64,000 nucleotides of DNA from Zygnema circumcarinatum SAG 698-1b (Eukaryota; Plantae; Zygnematophyceae): NCBI GenBank assembly GCA_037447605.1, contig CM074817.1, forward strand, positions 62,001 through 126,000, in the 5' to 3' direction. The notes beneath the pieces were generated by a model, which was not told the origin of the DNA, made no database searches, and was given only the letters and a program-made list of their open reading frames with translations. Numbering within the stretch: the stretch's first letter is position 1; each line of letters begins with the position of its first letter. The position numbers were made by a program, and so were the translations under genes. Positions 12,831 through 63,687 of this stretch are shown here, one piece after another.

Positions 12831-14235
12831 TCACATGAAGTCCTCCTCGAGCTCTTGGAGGGACTTCCCCTTGGAGGCAATGTCCTTGTTGGAGGTCATC
12901 TTCTCCGCCACCATGAGCCCTTTGTAGCTCTTCAGCTCCGCCACGCGCTCCCTCTCCGCCCTCTCCTCCGCCGCTCGCCGGTTCTGCACAGCTTTTAGGG
13001 TTCTGGTTTTAGGGTTCTGGTTTAGGGTTCTGGGTTTAGGGTTCTGGTTTAGGGTTCTGGGTTTAGGGTTCTGGTTTAGGGTTCTGGTTTTAGGGTTCTG
13101 GTTTTAGGGTTCTGGCTTAGGGTTCTGGTTTAGGGTTCTGGTTTTAGGGTTCTGGTTTAGGGTTCTGGTTTTAGGGCTCTGGGTTTAGGGCTCTGGGTTT
13201 AGGGCTCTGGGTTTAGGGCTCTGGGTTTAGGGCTCTGGGTTTAGGGCTCTGGGTTTAGGGCTCTGGGTTTAGGGCTCTGGATTTAGGGCTCTGCTTTTAG
13301 GGCTTTTAGGTTTTCTAGGGATTTCAGGGTCTTTAGGGTTTTCTTTCTCACAAATGTGTAAAGGAGCCATGCTTTAAGAGGATGGAAAGGGAGAGAAAGA
13401 GAGGGACGGAACGACCTTTGCTACCAGAGGGAGAGCAGACAAGCAAGATTGACTTTTTATTTCTATTCTTTTTATTTGAGATATAAAGGCCTCACCTTCT
13501 CGCGCATGAAGACCTTCCTTTCCGCTCTCTCAGCAGAGTCTCGGGCCTCCCGTTCGGCTGTCATTGCATGAAAGGAGAGAAGTCAAGTCTCTCTCTCTCT
13601 ATCTCTCTCTCTCTCTCTTTCTCTCCCTCCCTCCCCCTTCGCACTCTCTCTAGCCTTCATTCGCTTTCGCATCCTCTCATCCCTCCCCTCTGCTCCTCCC
13701 CCCTCTCTCACTCGCTTCTCTCCCTCCTTCCCTCCCTCCACCCATGTATTATAGAAGGACTTTTTGAGTCAAAAACTACCTTTAAGATCGGGCTTCAGCT
13801 CCACCTTCGTCTTGTTGAGGCGATTCACCACTTCATTCAGTCTTTTCTCAACTTTCACCGTTCGCACCTGGATGAATCCCAACCCGTAATCATCTCCAAC
13901 AAGGCTTTCTGAATACAAAGCTCCACTTCCAGTGTTTGCAGAGCAACGTGGGAAAGTTTGAATTCAAGCGAAGAAATAGGGCCAATAAAGAGGTAAACCT
14001 CTAATCAAGAGTTGACCCACACACTTGCATGAGGGCGGGTTGTGCAAAGGTTGAGGCGCTCACCAATTTAGGGTTGTGGAAACTGACTTGACCAACGTCC
14101 ATAGCTGCGGTCTTCTTAAGGTTGAACCAGGGAGTGTATACAACATCTAAATTATTAAGCTTGTTTCCTGAAACAACCCATCAAACACACACACACACAC
14201 ATGAGACATAGAGAGAGAGAGAGAGAGAGAAAGAG

Positions 14236-14284
<49 letters not shown>

Positions 14285-15238
14285 AACGCAAAAGACGCAT
14301 GCTTTACCTTGAATAGAGTTCGCCTTCACTAACTGAGCGCAGTCCTCTAGCATTTCTGGGGTAACGTCCTCAATTCCCTGCCCCTTCTTAAGGCGCAGGT
14401 ACACATGAGCTGATGATAATTTGTCCACGTGGAACCTGACAGAGATGACATAGTTATAATCATTATTAAAACAAGCAGAGAAACATAAACAGGCGGAGGA
14501 CAATATCTGCGCGGTTTTCGAGGTATAGAGCGAACAGCACTATGGGATTGCATCCTTTTTAGGATTCTGAATGCTGAAACTCGGCGATTAGGGTTCAGCT
14601 CGATACCGTTCTATTAAGACATAACTTACAGGATTGAAAGGGAATGGCTTGAATCGATGTCTGGAAGTACTCATCTTTAGACATATTTCAAGAGTAAGCA
14701 CATTCCCAACGCTTGGTCTCCCCTCCCCCTCCACTCCCTCCCTCCTTCTCCTCTCCTCCCCCCTCTTTCCCTCTCTCTCTCCTCTTCCTCTCCCTCTCCA
14801 CTCCCTCCCTGTCCCTCTCCTCTCCCTCTCCCTTCCCTCTCCTCTCCTCTCCCTTCCCTCTCCCCTCTCCCCCCTCTCTCTCCCCTACCTCTCTCCCTCC
14901 CCTCTCCCTCCCCACTCCCTCCCCTCTACCTCTCCCTCGCTCTCCCTCCCCTCTCGCCCTCCCCTCTCCCTCCGCTCCCTCCCCTCCCTCCACTCTCCCC
15001 CTCCCTTCTCCCTCCCCTCTCTCCCCTTTCCCCCTCCCCTCTCCCTCCCCTCCATCCCCTCTCCCCCTCCCTCCCTCTCCCTCCCCTCCCCCTCCTCCTC
15101 CCCCTCCCCCTCCTTCCCCACCCACCAGATATCCTCCGGCAGGCCGTATTTAATGAGGTCCTCGTTCTCGAACTTATCCAGGCCCATGTACAGCGTCAGG
15201 TCCCCCGCCTCGGGCCGCACCTTGAAATAGAAAACCAT
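12831..15238 (-). CDS. CCDC25: Coiled-coil domain-containing protein 25 (DUF814/NFACT-R)
   Basis: Five exons: [27 protein letters not shown] | [24 protein letters not shown] | [25 protein letters not shown] | [16 protein letters not shown] (plus the short exon AEREARD..) | ..QELEEDFM*. Confidence 0.93.
12993..13340. repeat. Telomere-derived minisatellite (TTT[T]AGGGTTCTGG / TTTAGGGCTCTGGG) in the last CCDC25 intron
   Basis: More than 20 tandem 13-14-bp units in two homogenised blocks, ending ~8 nt from the splice acceptor at 12984. Confidence 0.9.
14716..15120. repeat. Polypyrimidine/polypurine low-complexity intron tract
   Basis: Nearly pure C/T on the + strand, inside CCDC25 intron 1. Confidence 0.9.
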
Positions 15239-18704: not shown

Positions 18705-22854
<4,150 letters not shown>

Positions 22855-24901: not shown

Positions 24902-27900
24902 GAAAGAAAGCAAGCAAGCCAACCTTAACATCATCACAGAGCTTCACACCCACCGAAAGAAAAGAATAAAAAGAGAATAAAAAATTCCTGACCGAGAAGA
25001 GGACGGGAGGGGAGGGGAGGGAAGGGGAGGGGTTATCTCCTCCCCACATATCCAAATTGGGGGGGAGAATAGCCGAAATGGGAGGGGTGGGATTTCAAAA
25101 AAACAGGGGCGGGAAAACATATTAACATTCTGCAAGAGAAGTTGATGCAAAAAGGGTTGTTTAAGAATTATTTTTTCTTACCTGAAATCTTGGGCTGTCC
25201 GAATTTGAGCCTCTTGAAGTTTTGCTGAATGCAGGGCTGCCACTTTTAAGCCCTCCTTTGAAAGCCCCTTCATAAGCATCTCGACATTTTCCTCCGAAGA
25301 TGCGGAAATTAAAATTCGGCGCTTGATCCTCGCTTTCTCTTCGGCTGAATGCTCCTCTTTGATGAATTTCAACACCTGCCCGAACAAGAAATGAAGGTGG
25401 AAAAAACAATACTAGATTAAATGACTGACTGACTGACTAAAACGAAATTATAGGATAAACTGACTTATAATTGACTAACTGGTTAACCTTCTACGGCTAT
25501 ATTTTTTAGCATGGAAACACATGCAAATGGAGAAAGTGCAATTTTAGGGTTTGTAGGGTTTTAGAATTCTAGGGTTTAAGGGTAACCTGCCACCACACCT
25601 TAGCCATTTTTTTGTCGTCACTTGAACACACGCTTATGCTGACGTCAAGAGCTGCACACGTGGCAGCTGCACCGTCGTCCACGGCAGCCCTAAAAATAGG
25701 ATCGCGGAGCCAGGATTGCGCCACCTGTCGCGCCGCCATTGGATGCTCCGTACAGAGCAGTACGGTCTGGCACTTGCCCTGAACCCTCCCCCGGAGGTCC
25801 GCCAATAGGCGCACAGCCCCGCCCTCCGCCCCCTCCGAGGTCGAGGTCGAGGGTTCAGAGACTTCGTCGGCTCCGTCTAAAACCTGCATCGCCGGGAGGA
25901 GGGAGGAGGGAGGAGGGGGAGAATCAGCTCTTGTAGACGGGGCTTGGAAGCGAGCAGGGCTGTTGGCGGAGTGGATGGGAGGGGGAGGGGGGGAGGGGGG
26001 GGAGGGGAGGGGGGAGGGGGGGAGGGGGGAGGGGGGAGGGGGGAGGTGGGAGGGGGAGGGGAGGGGGAGGGGGGAGGGGAGGGGGAGGGGGAGGGGGGAG
26101 GGGGGAGGGGGGAGGGGAGGGGGGAGGGGGAGGGGGGAGGGGGGAGGGGGAGGGGAGGGGGGAGGGAGTGGGGGGAGGGGGAGGGGGAGGGGTGGAGGGG
26201 AGGGGGGGAGGGGGGGAGGGGGAGGGGTGGGAGGGAGTGGGGGGAAGGGGAGAGGGAAAGAGGGAGAGGGGGGGAGGGGAGGGGGGAGGGAGTGGGGGAA
26301 GGGGAGAGGGAAAGAGGGAGAGGGGGGGAGGGGAGGGGGAGGGGAGGGGAGGGGGGAGGGGGAGGGGGGGAGGGGAGGGGGAGGGGGGAGGGGGAGGGGG
26401 AGGGGGAGGGGGGAGGGGGAGGGGAGGGGGAGGGGGGGAGGGGGAGGGGGGGGAGGGGAGGGGAGGGGGAGGGAGTGGGGGGAGGGGGAGGGGTGGAGGG
26501 GAGGGGGAGGGAGGGGGGAGGGGAGGGGGAGGGGGAAGGGGAGAGGGAGGAGGGGGAGGGGAGGAGGAGGGGGAGGGGGGAGGGGGAGGGGGGAGGGGGA
26601 GGGGGAGGGGGGAGGGGGGGAGGGGGAGGGGGGGAGGGGGGGAGGGGGGAGGGGGAGGGGGAGGGGGAGGGGGGGAGGGGGGGAGGGGGGAGGGGAGGGG
26701 AGGGGAGGGGGAGGGGGGGGAGGGGGGGAGGGGAGGGGGAGGGGGGAGGGGGGGAGGGGGGAGGGGAGGGGGAGGGGGGGAGGGGGAGGGGGAGGGGGGG
26801 GAGGGGGAGGGGGGGAGGGGGAGGGGGGAGGGGGAGGGGGAGGGGGGAGGGGGAGGGGGAGGGGAGGGGGGAGGGGAGGGGAGGAGGGGGAGGGGGAGGG
26901 GGGAGGGGGAGGGGGAGGGGAGGGGAGGGGGGAGGGGGAGGGGAGGGGGGAGGGGGAGGGGGAGGGGGAGGGGGAGGGGAGGGGAGGGGAGGGGGAGGGA
27001 GTGGGGGGAAGGGGAGAGGGAAAGAGGGAGAGGGGGGGGGAGGGGGAGGGGGGGAGGGGGAGGGGGGAGGGGGAGGGGAGGGGAGGGGGAGGAGGGAGGG
27101 GAGGGAGGGGAGGGGGGGGAGGAGGGGAGGAGGGAGGGGGAGGGGGGGAAGGAGGGAGAGGGAGGAAGTGCGAAGAGCGACTAAGGCAGCCCACCAGAAA
27201 GGAGACCCGCGAAAGAGAAAGGGCCCCTCCATCCACAAGGGCGGAAAGTCTTCCAATTGTTCCGACGACAAGTTCTATGGCCTGAGACTCGAGTCTGCAG
27301 AAAATAGAACAAGTTGATCCTCAAACTTCAAATTTCTACGAGAAGTAGCAAGTAAAAAACGCAAAATCAGAGCGCATTTTGACTGCATGATTCCTTTTTA
27401 CAAAGGGCTTCTAGGGTTGAAGCAACCCTTAAATCTGTACTGTCTGGAAGTGGCCTACAAATCTACAGAAAATGCAAAACTCTAAATCAACCCTGAAGCC
27501 AACAATTGAGCCCATCCGATATCCACGAATGAACTTTCACTATCAACTTACATCCCAAATCATTGAAATACTGGGAGAAAAAAAGATTTTTCAGCTCACC
27601 CAGCAGCTTGATGCTCCATAGAAGTCCCCTCGTGTATAGCCACCGATCGAATATTTTGGCCTTCCTTTAATAACTTCAGCAGATTTCTAATTTCCAAAAC
27701 AGCCTCTCTATTTGGAGCCACAATGAGAGCAATAGGCCCATCTCCTTTCTGAACGGGCACTTGTGCTGTTACATGAACAGCAGCAGGAAGAGTATAACAT
27801 ATTGCACGAAGAGCTCTCTCCCTCTCCCACTCCCTCTCCCTCTCCCTCTCTCCGCCCTCGGCATTGTGCCCTTTGCTCTCTCCATTTTGCCCATGAGGAA

Positions 27901-32849: not shown

Positions 32850-39605
<6,756 letters not shown>

Positions 39606-48901: not shown

Positions 48902-50132
48902 ATGTCTCTTCATATGTACACGCAGTGGCGCCTTCTCCCTCTCGCAGCAGTAATTTATTACTTTGCACATGCTTCTGTTGCCTCCGCACTCTATGGAGGG
49001 CTCTCAGGGACTACCACCGCCACGTGGTATGGGGCTCCTGAAGGCGACGGATCGGACGGTATGTCCGATTAATATTAAACTATATAAATTTCTATTTTTT
49101 TATTCTATAAAAAATTCTTCGATGAAATAGGCTGATCGCAACGAAAAATTTCATGTTGAGAGTTCTCCTTTGACCTTTCCCTTCTATTTGGCGCATTTTC
49201 TAATCCATATACAGAGCTGAATGCCCCCTTTCTTTCCTGCAGGCGGAGCTTGCGGCTATGGGCCCCTCTCCCACACTCCATATCAAGCGTTTATTGTCGC
49301 TGGGAGCGCCCCCCTCTTTTTGAATGGAGCCGGGTGTGGAGCATGCTACCAGGTAACGCTCTCCCTTCCGCTCCCTGTCCCACTCCCACTCCCTCTTCCA
49401 TTCCCACTCCCACTCCCTCTGCCTCTCTCACTCTCTCTCCCACCCACTCCCACTCCCTCTTCCACTCCCACCTCACTCTCACTCTCACTCTCTCACTCCC
49501 ACTCCCACTCCCACTCCCACTCCCTCTCCCACTCCCACTCCCACTCCCTCTCCCACTCCCTCTCCCTCTCCCTCCCAGCAAGCCCTCCCTATCCTCCCCT
49601 CATTCTAACCCCCCCTCCACGCAGTCACCATTTCCGCCAGCTCTCGAACGGGCTCCCTCCCTTGCAGACGGACACAAACGATCCAAAAGGATCCTAAACT
49701 CGCGCGATTGACGAGTCCCTTGGTAAATCCTGACCGTCGATGCTGCGGTTGGGCGGGCGGACGGAATCGGTTGGGGGCAGGTCCAGTGCACGAGCAGCAG
49801 CCTGTGCTCGGCGACGGGCGTCGTGGTCGCGGTGACCGACCTCTGTCCGGGCGGCGACTTCTGCGGCGGCGGCAACACGCACTTCGACCTGAGCGGGGCG
49901 GCCTTCGGGGCGCTGGCGGTGCCGGGGCGGGCCAATGACCTGCGGACACTTGGCGTGCTCACCGTCGCCTACGACCGGTAGGCGCACGCCCCAACGGCCA
50001 ACACTCTCACTACGGACACCGCCCTCGCCCTCTTTCTCTCTCTTCGAGCAAGGGCTGAACTGAACTCATGTGAAGTGAAGCCTGCTTTGGAAAAAGCTCC
50101 ATTTCATTGGTGAGTAGTTTTCGAAGGTTAAA

Positions 50133-50173
<41 letters not shown>

Positions 50174-53100
50174 GTGTATCCGCATTGTGTGGTGGCAGAA
50201 CGCCATGCAACTTCCCGGGTCGGAATCTATTCTTGGAAATCTTGCCGGGATTCAATCCGTATTATGTTGGGGTTGTACCTGGCGGAGGAGCCGGCCCCGG
50301 GTCCGTGGCAGCCATGGCTATCAAACAGGTGAGGAAGGCGCGTGCTTGTTGGCTCCGGGTCATTCTCTGGTAAAGAACCAAACCGGCGCACACAAAATTT
50401 TAGTCATGCATGTGGCCAATATAGTCAGTTTGCTCGTAATTTGTTGCTCAAACATAGTTTAAGCTTATCGTTATTCATGTTTGCAGTCGACCTCGCCAAC
50501 TTTCCAACCTTTGACAAAGGACTGGGGAGCTTCTTTCATCCTTCAGTCTCCGACTCCTATGAGCGGTCCCTTTACCGTCCAAATTACTGCTGGTGCTACA
50601 GGTGCCTATTGCCATTACTTAGCTTAAAAGAAGCTCAAAGCTGAGTACGTTAATCACACAAATCAAACAACGAAAAAAACACTGACTAATTTGAAATTCT
50701 GCTCGTTTCAGGTGAAGTCATTACTTGTCCGAATACCATTCCAAGCTCCTTCGTTGCTGGGTATTTATACGACTGTGGAGCTCAGTTTTCAAGTGGAGCG
50801 GACACTGTAACTCCAGTGCCTGCGTCCCCCCTAATAGCAAGTTCTCCACCTCCTTTACGTTCACCTCCACTTCCTTCACCTTCGCCCCCTCCTCCATCTT
50901 TGCCTTCGCCCCCTCCTCCATCTTTGCCTTCGCCCCCTCCTCCATCTTCACCTTCGCCCCCTCCTCCATCTTCACCTTCGCCCCCTCCTCCATCTTCACC
51001 TTCGCCTTCGCCCCCTCCTCCATCTTCACCTTCGCCCCCTCCTCCATCTTCACCTTCGCCCCCTCCTCCATCTTCACCTTCGCCCCCTCCTCCATCTTCA
51101 CCTTCGCCCCCTCCTCCATCTTCACCTTCGCCCCCTCCTCCATCTTCACTTTCGCCCCCTCCATCTTCGCCTTCGCCCCCTCCTCCATCTTCACCTTCGC
51201 CCCTCCTCCATCTTCACCTTCGCCCCCTCCTCCATCTTTGCCTTCGCCCCCTCCTCCATCTTCACCTTCGCCCCTCCTCCATCTTTGCCTTCGCCCCCTC
51301 CTCCATCTTTGCCTTCGCCCCCTCCTCCATCTTTGCCTTCGCCCCCTCCTCCATCTTCACCTTCGCCCCCTCCTCCATCTTTGCCTTCGCCCCCTCCTCC
51401 ATCTTTGCCTTCGCCCCCTCCTCCATCTTCACCTTCGCCCCTCCTCCATCTTCACCTTCGCCCCCTCCTCCATCTTCACCTTCGCCCCCTCCTCCATCTT
51501 TGCCTTCGCCCCCTCCTCCATCTTCACCTTCGCCCCCTCCTCCATCTTTGCCTTCGCCCCCTCCTCCATCTTCACCTTCGCCCCCTCCTCCATCTTCACC
51601 TTCGCCCCCTCCTCCATCTTTGCCTTCGCCCCCTCCTCCATCTTTGCCTTCGCCCCCTCCTCCATCTTTGCCTTCGCCCCCTCCTCCATCTTTGCCTTCG
51701 CCCCCTCCTCCATCTTTGCCTTCGCCCCCTCCTCCATCTTCACCTTCGCCCCCTCCTCCATCTTCACCTTCGCCCCCTCCTCCATCTTCACCTTCGCCCC
51801 CTCCTCCATCTTTGCCTTCGCCCCCTCCTCCATCTTTGCCTTCGCCCCCTCCTCCATCTTTGCCTTCGCCCCCTCCTCCATCTTCACCTTCGCCCCCTCC
51901 TCCATCTTCACCTTCGCCCCCTCCTCCATCTTCACCTTCGCCCCCTCCTCCATCTTCACCTTCGCCCCCTCCTCCATCTTTGCCTTCGCCCCCTCCTCCA
52001 TCTTCACCTTCGCCCCCTCCTCCATCTTCACCTTCGCCCCCTCCATCTTCACCTTCGCCCCCTCCTCCATCTTTGCCTTCGCCCCCTCCTCCATCTTTGC
52101 CTTCGCCCCCTCCTCCATCTTCACCTTCGCCCCCTCCTCCATCTTTGCCTTCGCCCCCTCCTCCATCTTTGCCTTCGCCCCCTCCTCCATCTTTGCCTTC
52201 GCCCCCTCCTCCATCTTTGCCTTCGCCCCCTCCTCCATCTTCACCTTCGCCCCTCCTCCATCTTCACCTTCGCCCCTCCTCCATCTTCACCTTCGCCCCT
52301 CCTCCATCCATCTTCACCTTCGCCCCCTCCTCCATCTTTGCCTTCGCCCCCTCCTCCATCTTCACCTTCGCCCCCTCCTCCATCTTCACCTTCGCCCCCT
52401 CCTCCATCTTCACCTTCGCCCCCTCCTCCATCTTCACCTTCGCCCCTCCTCCATCTTCACCTTCGCCCCTCCTCCATCTTCACCTTCGCCCCCTCCTCCA
52501 TCTTCACCTTCGCCCCCTCCTCCATCTTTGCCTTCGCCCCCTCCTCCATCTTTGCCTTCGCCCCCTCCTCCATCTTTGCCTTCGCCCCCTCCTCCATCTT
52601 CACCTTCGCCACCTCCTCCATCTTTGCCTTCGCCCCCTCCTCCATCTTCACCTTCGCCCCCTCCTCCATCTTCACCTTCGCCCCCTCCTCCATCTTCACC
52701 TTCGCCCCCTCCTCCATCTTTGCCTTCGCCCCCTCCTCCATCTTCACCTTCGCCCCCTCCTCCATCTTTGCCTTCGCCCCCTCCTCCATCTTCACCTTCG
52801 CCCCCTCCTCCATCTTCACCTTCGCCCCCTCCTCCATCTTCACCTTCGCCCCCTCCTCCATCTTCACCTTCGCCCCCTCCTCCATCTTCACCTTCGCCCC
52901 CTCCTCCATCTTCACCTTCGCCCCCTCCTCCATCTTCACCTTCGCCCCCTCCTCCATCTTCACCTTCGCCCCTCCTCCATCTTCACCTTCGCCCCCTCCT
53001 CCATCTTCACCTTCGCCCCTCCTCCATCTTCTCCTTCGCCCCCTCCTCCATCTTCACCTTCGCCCCCTCCTCCATCTTCACCTTCGCCCCCTCCTCCATC

Positions 53101-53336
53101 TTCACCTTCGCCCCCTCCTCCATCTTCACCTTCGCCCCTCCTCCATCTTCACCTTCGCCCCTCCTCCATCTTCACCTTCGCCCCCTCCTCCATCTTTGCC
53201 TTCGCCCCCTCCTCCATCTTTGCCTTCGCCCCCTCCTCCATCTTCACTTTCGCCCCCTCCATCTTCACCTTCGCCCCCTCCTCCATCTTCACCTTCGCCC
53301 CTCCTCCATCTTCATTTGATGGCCTCACCATCTTGA
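48902..53336 (+). CDS. Beta-expansin-like protein fused to a long Ser-Pro4 extensin-like tail (3' end uncertain)
   Basis: Exons 48902-49058, 49243-49352, 49781-49977, 50199-50328, 50487-50601 and 50712 onward give a signal peptide, [54 protein letters not shown] and [18 protein letters not shown]. The frame continues directly into (S/L)PSPPPPS repeats. Confidence 0.88.
50874..53313 (+). repeat. Coding 24-bp minisatellite, ~100 units (TCA/TTG CCT TCG CCC CCT CCT CCA TCT)
   Basis: Two main variants (Ser/Leu), some in-frame 21-bp units, and about a dozen 23-bp units with a C5-to-C4 change. Confidence 0.95.
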
Positions 53337-54502
53337 GACCAATGCAAATCCCCTTTTCTTTTGTCGCACATTGTTGGAAGTCAATAGTGAAAAGGAGAAA
53401 ACGAGGGGGGTGGAATGTCCAGAAAAAGAGGAGGGGAGGGGAGGAGGGGAGGGGAGGGGAGGGCCGGGGAGGACAGGGCAGGGGAGGGGAGGGAAGGGGA
53501 GGGGAGGGGAGGGGAGGGTCGGGGAGGACAGGGCCGGGGAGGACAGGGCAAGGGAGGGGAGGGGAGGGGAGGGGAGGAGAGGGCAGGGGATGGGCGGGAG
53601 CGGAGGGGACGGGAGGGGCGGGAAAAAGATTTTTTCCCGAAATTTTCAAAACTGGGGGGTACCAAAACGGGCAGGCAAAATTTTCAAAAGGGGGGTGCGA
53701 AAGACAAAACGCGGGGGTGCAGTAGAGTTACCCCAACGGATTCATGCGAAAAATTGAAAGGGCATTTACCGCGACTAGCTTGTCGATTGCCCGAACAAAT
53801 CACCAAACAGGCCTTTGTCCGTACACATTGAACAATTAATTATCGTTCGTGTTCAACTTGAGTTTTCCTTGGGTCCACCGACCAACCATGAGATTTTAGA
53901 GAATCGCAAAGCGCGTGGACCCTCTTGTTTGTACAGAAATTGTTGATCAGCTCCCGGGAAGAGTCGTACGGCAAAAATGGGGCCTGGGTTAACTCAATCC
54001 CTCGAATCGCACAGAACCAACGTGGCGAAAATTGGAATCCACACGTGCGACCGAACACATCGAGTCTTGAACTTTATTTTCCTTTAAAACTTTACGCTTT
54101 CTTAAATCGAAAGAATTTCGACCTCGAGTGTTCAGAGTTGAACCATAAGGGGGAGTCAGCCTGTCGGGCGAATTAAGCATTGGCAAGGTACGCATTTCGG
54201 TACGGCTGTGAACGGCGGAGCCGCGGATCCCGATCCGGAATTCGTACACGAAAGAAGTCTGACTCCCCCTATGAGATTCAATGAGATTGAAAATTGAGAA
54301 ATTAAATAAACTAGTCCGTACACCTGATTCGTCCTTATTTTGATTGTCGTACTGTATTATATAACGGATGGCCCGGATCTGGAACTAAATGAAAGTTTCC
54401 TTTGATCTGGATTTGTCTGTAAGACTCCAGGACAGTTGTGAAAGACAGCATCCGTACGAAAAGTCCAGAATTCGTCGCCGTTCGGCCAATCGTTGACTGT
54501 CA

Positions 54503-61338: not shown

Positions 61339-63687
61339 TTACACAACCCTAAAGGTGGCGCCACCCCCCACATTTTGGTACCCAAACCCATCGAAGGACC
61401 CCTTGGGTTTGAGAGGGAAGGCGTAGGAGGGCAGAGTGTAGCGGTTTCCTCCCAAAGGAACAATGTTGTAAGAGGAGAGAGGGCGGTAATTTGTGGCCTC
61501 CACTACCAAAGCAAGAAGGGGCTTTGTGCCGATGTTCTTGAAGCTCACAGAGTACGAAAAGACAGTGCTTTTGCCATCCGGGGAGGGATACTTTGACAGC
61601 AATTTCTGCGAAATAATGACTGTTGGGCCCCCTGCATGGGAAGTTCAATAGAGCAGATGTCGTCAGAGAGCTTCTTAATGCTCGGAATTAGTCTGTAAGG
61701 TGTCTCGATTTTTGCTATTTTTTTTTTTTTTTTTTTTTTTAATGAAAGGAATTGAGAGTTGCCAGAAATCAAAAAGTTTATGCATGGCACTATTTTTTTT
61801 GTTTGTTTTTTATTTGAGGTCAAAATGCCTCTACCTTTTGATGGAGGCGAGCCCTTTGGCGGAGGGCGAGCAGTCCTTGAGGGCGTGGGGGCTCCTCTCG
61901 AGAATTGGGCCCCGCAGTCATACAATTTCCCGGCAACGAATGCGGTCGGAATTTTATTTGGGCATGTGATCACTTCACCTGAAATTGCACAAAATCAAAA
62001 GCATAGTTAAAGCCTGCATGAATACCACCACGGTTAAGTAAAATATGGAAGGAAATAATAGCCCATCAGCTTCACAAGTTACTATGCGCATAGTTCAATA
62101 CATGCTATAATTCGTAAGGGAATAGACAATTAAACAAACAAATTATATAAGTTCGATTTGAAGCAAAGCTAAATTTACATAGCAGCTTATTAAAAATGTC
62201 TCAAACCTGTTGCGCTTGCGGTGAGCCGGACTGTGAAGGGACCCGTCAAGGGCGTCGAGGAGAGCAGGGAAAAGGATGCGCCCCAATCCTTTGCCAACGG
62301 TTGGAAGCTCGCTTTCTTCGCCTAAACCCGCACAAGTGAAGGGATGGGGAGGAGCGGGAAAACGAGACAGGGAGAAATAAGAGAGGGAGAGAGTGAGAGA
62401 GTGAGAGAGCGAGAGAGGGACGCAATAGTACGATTTCAAAACAAAGCACATATTCGTCCTTGTTCTTAGCGAACCGAACGAATTAAGAACTAAGTGGTTA
62501 AAGTTACAATGGTTCCGAGTGTAATTCACACCTATCCACACAAGAACGACCCACGAAGTCAAGCCCGCAAGCCGCCCCATCACCATCAAAAGAAGCTTCG
62601 CCAACAAGCACGCGCCTTCCTCACCTGTTTGATAGCCATGGCTGCCACGGACCCGGGGCCGGCTCCTCCGCCCGGTACAACCCCAACATAGTAGGCATTG
62701 AATCCCGGCAAAATTCGAAGCAACAAATTTTGGGACCCAAAGTTGCATGGCGTTCTGCCCCCACACAATACGGATTCAAACACACGTTTAGCCTTCCCTC
62801 TCCCTCTCCCTCTCCCTTCATGCGACCCTCTTCTCCCGCCTCCCTCTTTCACAAACCTTCCCAATAGAAGAGCAGGCTTCACTTCACATGAGTTCAGTTC
62901 AGCCCTTGCTTGCAGAGAGAGAGAGAGAGAGGGCGAGGGCGGTGCCCGTAGCGACAGTGTTGGCCGTTGGGGTGTGCGCGTACCGCTCGTAGGCGACGGT
63001 GAGCACGCCTAGTGTCCGCAGGTCATTGGCCCGCCCCGGCACCGCGAGCGCGCCGAAGGCCGCCCCTGAGAGGTCGAAGTGCGTGTTGCCGCCGCCGCAG
63101 AAGTCGCCGCCCGGGCAGAGGTCGGTCATCGCGACCGCGACGCCCGTCGCCGAGCACAGGCTGCTGCTCGTGCACTGGACCTGCCCCCAACCGATTCCGT
63201 CCGCCCGCCCAACCGCAGCATCGACGGTCAGGATTCGCCAAGGGACTCTTCAATCGTGCGAGTTCAGGATCCTTTTGGATCGTCTGTGTCTGTCTGGAAG
63301 GGAGGGATGCCGTTCGGGAGCTGGCGGAAATGGTGACTGCGTGCAGGGAGGGTTAGAATAAGGGGAGGATAGGGAGGGCTTGCTGGGAGGGGGAGGGAGA
63401 GGGGGAGGGAGTGGGAGAGGGAGTGGGAGTGGGAGTGGGAGAGGGAGTGGGAGTGGGAGTGGGAGAGGGAGTGGGAGTGGGAGTGGGAGAGGTAGTGGGA
63501 GTGAGAGTGGGAGTGGGAGTGAGAGAGGGAATGGGAGAGGAAGTGAGAGTGGCAGAGAAGGGTAAGTGGAGCTGTACTTTGTAGCACGCTCCACAGCCGG
63601 CTCCGTTTAAGAAGAGAGGAGCGGACCCAGCAGCGATAATTTTCTTGTAGGGAGTGGGCGAGAGAGGGCCATAGCCGCATGCTCCAC
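61339..63687 (-). CDS. Beta-expansin-like protein with a Pro linker and a C-terminal CBM49-like domain (exon 1 outside window)
   Basis: Exons 63687-63578 and 63180-62984, then ~62755-62626, ~62315-62206 and ~61978-61835, are paralogous to expansin 1. The donor AAAG|gtagag (61835) joins cag|GG (61631) in frame to [38 protein letters not shown]. Confidence 0.88.

What the first reader, a model, noticed from the sequence alone, without database searches (positions are those of the whole stretch)
48902..53336. Expansin-extensin chimera: beta-expansin-like protein with an ~800-residue Ser-Pro4 tail
Seen: the exon finishing expansin domain 2 (..[21 protein letters not shown]) continues without a stop into ~100 (S/L)PSPPPPS units. 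Established: canonical plant expansins are two-domain proteins of ~25-28 kDa. SP4 is the extensin hydroxylation/arabinosylation motif, and the named chimeric extensin classes are LRX, PERK and formins. The tail has no Tyr cross-linking motifs. Inference: a wall-loosening head on a long glycosylated rod that could tether or space it in the wall or mucilage. I do not know of this as a characterised class.
Basis: partly seen in the sequence, partly recalled or inferred. Interest (0 to 1): 0.8.

Follow-up and report, generated by a model that had tools for sequence, protein, structure and literature searches.

The report
Expansin gene running into Ser-Pro4 array
A real, expressed wall-loosening (expansin) gene of a streptophyte alga runs without a stop into a 2.4-kb repeat that can encode an extensin-like Ser-Pro4 rod, but the assembly breaks that reading frame 12 times and the gene's far end is unverified, so the giant rod protein is plausible rather than shown.

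Summary
The head is confirmed. It is a six-exon, GT-AG gene (48902-50815) encoding a signal-peptide-like start, DPBB_1 and Expansin_C with an intact HFD motif. It is 41-48% identical to land-plant EXPB3-like proteins. Against a neighbouring paralog it shows purifying selection (dN/dS 0.16).

Exon 6 runs without a stop into a 24-bp x 102 array (50874-53314). The array has no stop in any frame and no GT or AG. Contigs of RNA-like runs cross from exon 6 into it.

The "~800-residue SP4 tail" is not what the assembly encodes. Thirteen units carry C4 instead of C5, so the SP4 phase changes 12 times. In the expansin frame only 53 of 102 units read as SP4. The rest read LLHLHLRP or SSIFTFAP, and that ORF ends at 53725, not 53336.

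Whether the C4 units are assembly miscalls or real is unresolved. Short-read contigs leave holes over them, yet all 13 lie on one unit subtype (p=0.0035). The array ends at a very high-copy dispersed repeat, and no contig bridges that junction.

Earlier notes of this scan report other extensin-rod chimeras in this genome, one of them also frame-broken. Verdict: a plausible new chimeric extensin with an expansin head, still unproven.

The parts
48902..49058 (+). Exon 1: ATG, hydrophobic signal-peptide-like N-terminus, start of expansin domain 1 (TWYG...)
   Evidence: Gene model with a GT donor. The signal peptide is judged by eye, not by a predictor.
49243..49352 (+). Exon 2: GGACGY ... GCGACYQ part of domain 1
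   Evidence: AG/GT borders. Inside the DPBB_1 hit. Intron 2 holds a TCCCAC microsatellite at 49378-49572.
49781..49977 (+). Exon 3: core of domain 1 with the HFDLSG motif
   Evidence: Aligns to maize EXPB1 (2hcz, E 2.2e-05) and Phl p 1 (1n10) with HFDLSG conserved. 95% identical to the paralog's exon.
50199..50328 (+). Exon 4: end of domain 1 and start of domain 2
50487..50601 (+). Exon 5: domain 2 (Expansin_C / CBM63-type)
   Evidence: RNA-like runs hold 0.57 of the sampled words of 50487-50900, against about 0.64 expected if the exons alone are covered.
50712..50815 (+). Exon 6, head part: end of domain 2 (...[21 protein letters not shown])
50816..50873 (+). Degenerate Pro-rich linker (PASPLIASSPPPLRSPPLP) in the expansin frame, made of diverged proto-units
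   Evidence: period-21 row at 50844-50895. The paralog has a short Pro-rich linker at the same place.
50874..53314 (+). 24-bp x 102 tandem array. There are two main unit types: TCA (Ser, 63 units) and TTG (Leu, 34 units). No stop in any frame, and no GT or AG.
   Evidence: Contigs of RNA-like runs X7 and X9 enter it from exon 6 (loose ends at 53170).
51200..53301 (+). The 13 C4 runs that shift the SP4 phase, starting at 51200, 51271, 51438, 52250, 52273, 52296, 52443, 52466, 52969, 53016, 53135, 53158 and 53298
   Evidence: All 13 lie on TCA-type units (Fisher p=0.0035). Run depths are consistent with no short-read contig lying over 53127-53151 in X3 and X7.
53305..53735 (.). High-copy dispersed repeat that abuts the array end, with an internal GGAGG microsatellite at 53430-53622. 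The literal ORF reads about 140 codons into it, to the stop at 53723-53725.
   Evidence: Summed word depth is 1e4-1e5 in DNA runs X1 and X3, against roughly 10-260 in the array. Many different flanks appear at 53305/53311 and at 53733-53737. No terminal inverted repeats were found.
61339..63687 (-). Convergent paralog: expansin head, short Pro-rich linker and CBM49 exon (its exon 1 was not located)
   Evidence: tblastn. CBM49 hit at 1.6e-05, above Pfam's cutoff. In-frame GT-AG splice. Head dN/dS 0.16.

Best explanation
This is a functional, expressed beta-expansin-like gene of a streptophyte alga. The short Pro-rich linker that follows expansin domain 2 in this gene family has been amplified recently into a 24-bp minisatellite of about 100 units.

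The intended product is a secreted two-domain expansin carrying a long Tyr-free (S/L)PSPPPPS tail. Such a tail would be hydroxylated and O-arabinosylated into a stiff polyproline-II rod. At about 0.3 nm per residue, up to ~800 residues would reach roughly 250 nm. A rod of that size would limit diffusion and hold or space the wall-loosening head within the wall or sheath.

On this reading, the 12 frame changes are C5-to-C4 homopolymer miscalls of the long-read assembly.

Shown: the head, the in-frame fusion, transcription into the array, and the absence of stops and splice sites. Inferred: the miscalls, transcription through the whole array, the glycosylation and the tethering role.
For: - Head: DPBB_1 and Expansin_C, both above Pfam's cutoffs. 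The HFDLSG motif aligns to EXPB1 2hcz. Identity to EXPB3-like proteins is 41-48%.
- Selection: dN/dS 0.16 at dS 0.67 against the paralog head.
- Expression: runs X7, X9 and X11 hold 0.33-0.40 of the words of the 2-kb genomic stretch, which matches the exon-only fraction of 0.35-0.37. They hold 0.57 of the words of 50487-50900.
- Entry into the array: X7 and X9 contigs carry the exon-6 sequence CTCCACCTCCTTTACGTTCACCTCCACTTC directly before array units.
- Array: 0 stops in three frames, 0 GT and 0 AG.
- C4 units: the depths of X3 and X7 in 53124-53151 equal exactly what contigs ending at 53126 would give. This points to no contig over the C4 runs in those runs.
- Family context: the paralog has a Pro-rich linker plus CBM49 at the same position.
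- Unchecked earlier notes report many extensin-rod chimeras in this genome, and another rod that the assembly also frame-breaks.
Against: - All 13 C4 units are of the TCA subtype and none of the 34 TTG units is (p=0.0035). This fits an inherited real variant better than random miscalls.
- Logan contigs drop minor variants, so holes over the C4 runs are weak evidence.
- No contig bridges the array to its 3' flank. X7 coverage stops at 53297. The flank is a high-copy repeat, and 53740-53850 had zero depth in all four runs. Full-length transcription and the stop codon are therefore unknown.
- The units are nearly identical, so there is no sign of selection acting on the tail itself.
- No relative with a comparable tail was found.
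Confidence: 0.5

Rival explanations
1. The C4 units are real. A neutrally evolving CT-rich minisatellite has expanded at the 3' end of an expansin gene. The encoded tail is then a mosaic of SP4 blocks (13, 34, 1 and 5 units) interrupted by hydrophobic LLHLHLRP and SSIFTFAP blocks, and it runs on into repeat-derived sequence. The tail is tolerated junk or marks a gene on its way to decay. It is not a designed rod.
For: - The C4 variant sits only on TCA-type units (13 of 63 against 0 of 34, p=0.0035). It partly forms adjacent clusters, as inherited unit variants do.
- The units show almost no other variation, which points to very recent amplification.
- The array ends at a high-copy dispersed repeat, with no natural-looking C-terminus.
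- CT/GA-rich low-complexity arrays are common in non-coding DNA of this window.
Against: - No short-read contig lies over the C4 runs at 53127-53151 in X3 or X7, although 13 copies should give good depth.
- The head is under purifying selection and is expressed.
- Another rod gene of this genome is reported as frame-broken by the assembly, which suggests a systematic artefact (unchecked note).
Confidence: 0.3
2. The mature product is effectively a normal-sized expansin with a short Pro-rich tail. On this view most transcripts end early in the array, or the tail is removed by proteolysis after secretion, and the rest of the array is irrelevant genomic satellite.
For: - In run X9, array depth is seen only over units that match the entry of the array (53152-53263) and is zero over pure TCA-type units.
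- No RNA contig reaches the 3' flank.
Against: - There is no stop codon in any frame for 2.4 kb, so early-ending transcripts would be non-stop mRNAs.
- There are no GT or AG sites for canonical splicing.
- Run X7 does cover TCA-type array words at depth 25-40.
- Contigs built from short reads cannot show continuity through a tandem repeat either way.
Confidence: 0.12
3. Assembly artefact: the array length or its 3' junction is a mis-join of an expansin gene to a satellite or repeat region.
For: - No contig bridges 53297-53311.
- The 3' flank is a repeat with thousands-fold depth.
- The next 110 bases had no coverage in two DNA runs that hold 0.93-0.95 of the head's words.
Against: - The 5' junction (exon 6 into the array) is present in RNA-like contigs.
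- The word shares of the DNA runs cover the stretch up to 50870.
- The array has internal higher-order structure (Ser and Leu blocks), as a real locus would.
Confidence: 0.08

Closest known systems
Beta-expansins (EXPB; maize EXPB1/Zea m 1, PDB 2hcz; Phl p 1, 1n10)
   Same: The same two-domain head, DPBB_1 plus Expansin_C. The HFDLSG and GGACGY motifs and conserved Cys residues are present. Best sequence matches are EXPB3-like proteins. Grass EXPB allergens also carry Hyp and Hyp-arabinosides, on short N-terminal segments (PMC8012813).
   Different: Canonical EXPBs are about 250-280 aa. Known Pro-rich extensions are short and mostly N-terminal. Here a C-terminal array of up to ~800 residues follows. 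A 2026 study places green-algal expansins outside EXPA and EXPB (PMC13493406). No phylogeny was made here.
Chimeric extensins (LRX, PERK, formin-EXT, 'long' and 'other chimeric EXTs'; Liu et al. 2016, PMC4769139)
   Same: A signal-peptide-like start, a non-HRGP domain and repeated Ser-Pro3-5. Like the algal chimeric EXTs, it lacks the Tyr motifs of classical extensins.
   Different: The head is an expansin. That combination is not mentioned in the main text or in the 20 held supplementary files of that survey. The frame continuity of the rod is unproven.
The neighbouring paralog, and class C GH9 endoglucanases (catalytic domain, linker, CBM49)
   Same: The paralog at 63687-61339 (- strand) is 84% identical in the head. 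It continues from the same ...YDCGAQF end through a Pro-rich linker.
   Different: The paralog's linker is about 20 residues and leads over an intron to a CBM49. The gene studied here has about 100 repeat units, no donor site and no CBM49 exon downstream.
Fungal swollenin (CBM1, O-glycosylated Ser/Thr linker, expansin-like domains); recalled from general knowledge, not tested here
   Same: An expansin-type module joined to a glycosylated low-complexity linker.
   Different: Swollenin's linker is short and joins a binding module at the N-terminus. No terminal module is seen here.
P0203, a 401-aa product of a 1918-nt Logan contig (SRR8128903)
   Same: An expansin with the same ...LYNCGAQW-type end, followed by a Ser/Pro-rich C-terminal extension of about 120 aa with a proper stop.
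   Different: Only 35% identical. The extension is short and irregular, with no SP4 array. The organism is unknown.

Membership tests
Expansin superfamily | Domain 1 with the double-psi beta-barrel (DPBB / GH45-like) fold | tested here: met
   PF03330 DPBB_1, 61.2 bits against a cutoff of 28.8. PF22514 EXPB1_D1, 29.5 bits against 27.
Expansin superfamily | Domain 2 (Expansin_C / CBM63-type) directly following domain 1 | tested here: met
   PF01357, 39.3 bits against a cutoff of 24.6, residues 175-247.
Expansin superfamily | Conserved HFD motif and GGACGY / Cys framework in domain 1 | tested here: met
   NTHFDLSG aligns to HFDLSG of 2hcz and 1n10. GGACGY and eight Cys residues are visible in the model.
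Expansin superfamily | N-terminal signal peptide (secreted protein) | tested here: inconclusive
   A hydrophobic stretch, LLPLAAVIYYFAHASVASA, lies after the start. No signal-peptide predictor was available.
EXPB family proper | Falls inside the EXPB clade in a phylogeny, with the EXPB intron pattern A, C, B, F | not tested
   Best hits are EXPB3-like at 41-48% identity. The gene has five introns. No tree was built. PMC13493406 argues that algal expansins lie outside EXPA and EXPB.
Extensin (chimeric class) | Repeated Ser-Pro3-5 motifs in the translated protein, plus another domain | tested here: met
   48 SPPPP motifs in the literal expansin frame and 86 summed over the three frames. The expansin head is at the N-terminus.
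Extensin (chimeric class) | One continuous SP4 reading frame through the repeat | tested here: not met
   Twelve phase changes at C4 runs in the assembly. Whether these are assembly errors is unresolved.
Classical cross-linking extensin | Tyr cross-linking motifs (YXY, VYK) | tested here: not met
   No Tyr in the SP4 frames of the array.
Extensin (any class) | Pro hydroxylation and Hyp O-arabinosylation / Ser galactosylation | not testable with these tools
   Needs biochemistry.

The most novel reading that the evidence does not exclude
The alga really makes a ~1,100-residue secreted protein in which an active expansin head sits on a continuous, Tyr-free, arabinosylated Ser-Pro4 rod about 250 nm long, roughly the thickness of a wall. 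Wall loosening would then be positioned or confined by a molecular tether. The rod length would be set by a fast-evolving minisatellite that could vary between strains.
Probability: 0.3. Interest if true: 0.6.

Novelty: new variant of a known kind. Interest (0 to 1): 0.45.

Why it matters
Expansins are thought of as small, freely diffusing wall-loosening proteins. If one is tethered on a long glycoprotein rod, then where loosening happens could be fixed by the protein's own architecture.

Together with the neighbouring expansin-CBM49 gene and a noted two-expansin gene nearby, it would show that streptophyte algae diversified expansins by adding modules through Pro-rich linkers, as microbes do with cellulases.

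It is also a practical warning. Ser-Pro rods in this assembly carry single-base frame breaks, so automated gene models and HRGP censuses of this genome will be wrong until the arrays are checked with accurate reads.

Tried and rejected
1. The 60 residues around the domain-2 end, searched with length limits for long proteins, gave no hit. That search found no long-tailed close relative in the protein database.
As the tool advised, I laid a part with fewer copies (53040-53850). That used the only call, so the head-to-array junction was seen only through loose ends.
3. The continuation ACCTTCAGGTCGAACTCGC..., found after array-like units in one DNA contig and one RNA-like contig, is not in the window. 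It belongs to another locus.
4. I looked for a CBM49 exon or a second expansin module downstream of the array and found none.
5. A full-library phmmer search with exon 3 and a search restricted to long expansin-containing proteins found only tandem-fusion gene models and short Pro-rich extensions.
6. The 3' repeat has no terminal inverted repeats and no other copy in the window apart from its GGAGG core. There are no Rfam matches in 48-55 kb.
7. Papers: no expansin-extensin class turned up. The Micrasterias MdEXP2 'C-terminal extension' is described as expansin-like (EXLA-type), not Pro-rich.
8. I did not fold the head or search it as a spliced reference, because a spliced protein has no reference. 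The head was typed for only two searches.
Full report
**What is there**

On the + strand, six exons with canonical GT-AG borders (48902-49058, 49243-49352, 49781-49977, 50199-50328, 50487-50601, 50712 onward) join into one open frame. The first ~250 residues have three parts:
- a hydrophobic, signal-peptide-like start;
- a DPBB_1 domain (1.1e-16, 61 bits against a cutoff of 28.8);
- an Expansin_C domain (7e-10, 39 bits against 24.6).

Exon 3 aligns to maize EXPB1 (2hcz) and Phl p 1 (1n10) with the HFDLSG motif intact. The nearest proteins are land-plant EXPB3-like sequences at 41-48% identity and one from Mesotaenium at 46%. No near-identical protein is in either protein library.

**The repeat**

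After ...[21 protein letters not shown] comes a short degenerate Pro-rich stretch (50816-50873). Exon 6 then enters a 24-bp tandem array of 102 units at 50874-53314 (94% matches, 2% indels). The unit matches 89 times against 0 expected.

Only two unit types dominate. CCATCTTCACCTTCGCCCCCTCCT gives P-S-S-P-S-P-P-P (63 units). The TTG variant gives Leu in place of the second Ser (34 units). The array contains no stop in any frame and not a single GT or AG. Any mRNA colinear with the assembly must therefore be translated through it, and it cannot be spliced canonically from within.

Thirteen units have four C's where the others have five. Twelve of them are 23 nt long. One is 27 nt long and therefore stays in frame. 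The SP4-coding phase therefore changes 12 times.

In the frame continuous with the expansin, 53 units read as SP4, in blocks of 13, 34, 1 and 5. Another 26 read LLHLHLRP and 22 read SSIFTFAP. The literal product is 1240 aa with 48 SPPPP motifs, and it ends at 53725 after about 140 codons of non-genic-looking sequence. The net shift over the array is zero.

**Are the frame breaks real?**

For miscalls:
- In the one stretch that could be laid (53040-53850), the depths of DNA run X3 and RNA-like run X7 in the bin 53124-53151 equal exactly what contigs ending at 53126 contribute.
- X7 coverage also stops at 53297, just before the last C4 run. In those two runs no contig appears to cover the C4 runs, and no record shown for any of the four runs does, although 13 copies should give ample depth.
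- An earlier, unchecked note of this scan says another Ser/Pro rod gene of the same genome is also frame-broken by the assembly.

For real variants:
- All 13 C4 units are of the TCA subtype and none of the 34 TTG units is (Fisher p=0.0035). Inheritance by unit duplication explains this better than random miscalls.
- Logan contigs drop minor variants, so holes prove little.

I put this at roughly 55:45 in favour of miscalls.

**Expression**

Runs X7, X9 and X11, of unlabelled kind, hold 0.33-0.40 of the sampled words of the 2-kb genomic stretch. That matches the exon-only fraction of 0.35-0.37. They hold 0.57 of the words of 50487-50900, against about 0.64 expected if exons 5 and 6 are covered to the array and about 0.41 if coverage stopped at the end of domain 2. 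I therefore treat them as RNA runs that cover the whole head.

Contigs of X7 and X9 carry the unique exon-6 sequence CTCCACCTCCTTTACGTTCACCTCCACTTC directly before array units (loose ends at 53170). Transcripts therefore enter the array. Four other RNA-labelled runs hold none of it, which suggests conditional expression.

**The 3' end is not verified**

The array abuts a segment (53305-53430 and 53625-53735, around a GGAGG microsatellite) whose summed depth in DNA runs is 1e4-1e5, against roughly 10-260 in the array. Many different flanks appear at both of its ends. This is a very high-copy dispersed repeat. It has no terminal inverted repeats.

No contig bridges the array and this repeat. In addition, 53740-53850 had zero depth in all four runs, which I cannot explain. 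Full-length transcription, the true stop and even the junction itself remain open.

**Family context**

A convergent paralog (63687-61339, - strand) has an 84% identical head. Its exon 3 is 95% identical. dN/dS between the two heads is 0.16 at dS 0.67, so the heads have been under purifying selection since the duplication.

The paralog continues from the same ...YDCGAQF end through a ~20-residue Pro-rich linker. It then continues by an in-frame GT-AG splice into a CBM49 (1.6e-05, above Pfam's cutoff). No CBM49 exon or second expansin module lies downstream of the gene studied here.

One DNA contig and one RNA-like contig carry array-like units followed by a different sequence that is not in the window. 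Similar units therefore exist at another, expressed locus. Earlier notes list a gene with two expansin modules joined by an extensin-like linker about 43 kb beyond the window, and several other extensin-rod chimeras in this streptophyte alga. These notes are leads, not evidence.

**Most likely history and mechanism**

The Pro-rich linker that follows domain 2 in this local expansin family was amplified very recently into a minisatellite. The units are almost identical, whereas the paralogs differ by dS 0.67. If the frame is continuous, the product is a secreted expansin on a Tyr-free Ser-Hyp4 rod.

By the Hyp-contiguity rule (established knowledge), SP4 blocks are arabinosylated and adopt an extended polyproline-II form. 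About 800 residues would reach roughly 250 nm. Without Tyr, Lys or His the rod can neither be cross-linked by peroxidase nor bind pectin ionically. Any retention would come from its size, entanglement or glycan contacts. This functional part is inference.

**Comparison with what is known**

Expansins with short Pro-rich or Hyp-bearing extensions are known or visible in databases:
- grass EXPB allergens (PMC8012813);
- N-terminal extensions in grass EXPB7-like proteins and Striga EXPB2;
- a ~120-aa C-terminal Ser/Pro extension in a transcript-derived protein, P0203.

Chimeric extensins include a large catch-all class, 'other chimeric EXTs' (PMC4769139). Expansin is mentioned neither in that survey's text nor in its held supplements. 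No paper found describes an expansin-extensin class. None of the 286 relatives fetched has more than three SP3+ motifs.

**Verdict**

This is a new variant of known kinds: a chimeric extensin with an expansin head, or equally an expansin with a hyper-expanded linker. Its key property, a continuous expressed rod, still needs accurate reads and full-length cDNA.

Noticed in passing
window 61339-63687 (- strand): Paralogous expansin whose exon 6 ends in a ~20-residue Pro-rich linker. It splices in frame (GT-AG) to an exon encoding a CBM49 (Pfam 1.6e-05, above cutoff). This expansin-linker-CBM49 architecture resembles class C GH9 endoglucanases. Its exon 1 was not located.
   Followed up: partly
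window 53305-53735: Dispersed repeat of very high copy number. Summed contig depth is 1e4-1e5 in two DNA runs, and many different flanks are seen. It has an internal GGAGG microsatellite, no terminal inverted repeats and no second copy in this window. Parts of other copies are transcribed.
   Followed up: partly
window 53740-53850: Zero laid depth in all four runs, including two DNA runs that hold 0.93-0.95 of the words of the expansin head. Unexplained: it could be a filter, a strain difference or an assembly join.
   Followed up: no
another locus, not in the window (contigs of X3 and X7 laid at 53223-53281): A 1003-nt DNA contig and a 519-nt RNA-like contig carry about 59 nt of the same Ser-Pro4 units, then continue as ACCTTCAGGTCGAACTCGCTCTCCCCCACG. 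This is an expressed second locus with the same repeat family.
   Followed up: partly
window 12994-13302: Interstitial array of TTTAGGG-containing 14-bp units (TTTAGGGTTCTGGG x 22), that is, a plant-type telomere motif inside the window.
   Followed up: no
window 25977-27165, 19524-20101, 14718-15123, 34061-34581: Long G/A- or C/T-rich low-complexity arrays (GGGAGG, GAGGA, TCTCCC). They give spurious poly-Pro ORFs on one strand. CT-rich repeats in this genome need a frame and context check before they are called extensins.
   Followed up: no
L001 (Logan contig SRR8128903_25871), gene at 146-1351: Transcript-like contig from an unknown organism encoding a 401-aa expansin with a ~120-aa irregular Ser/Pro-rich C-terminal extension and a proper stop. 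It is the nearest public example of a C-terminal Pro-rich tail on an expansin.
   Followed up: partly
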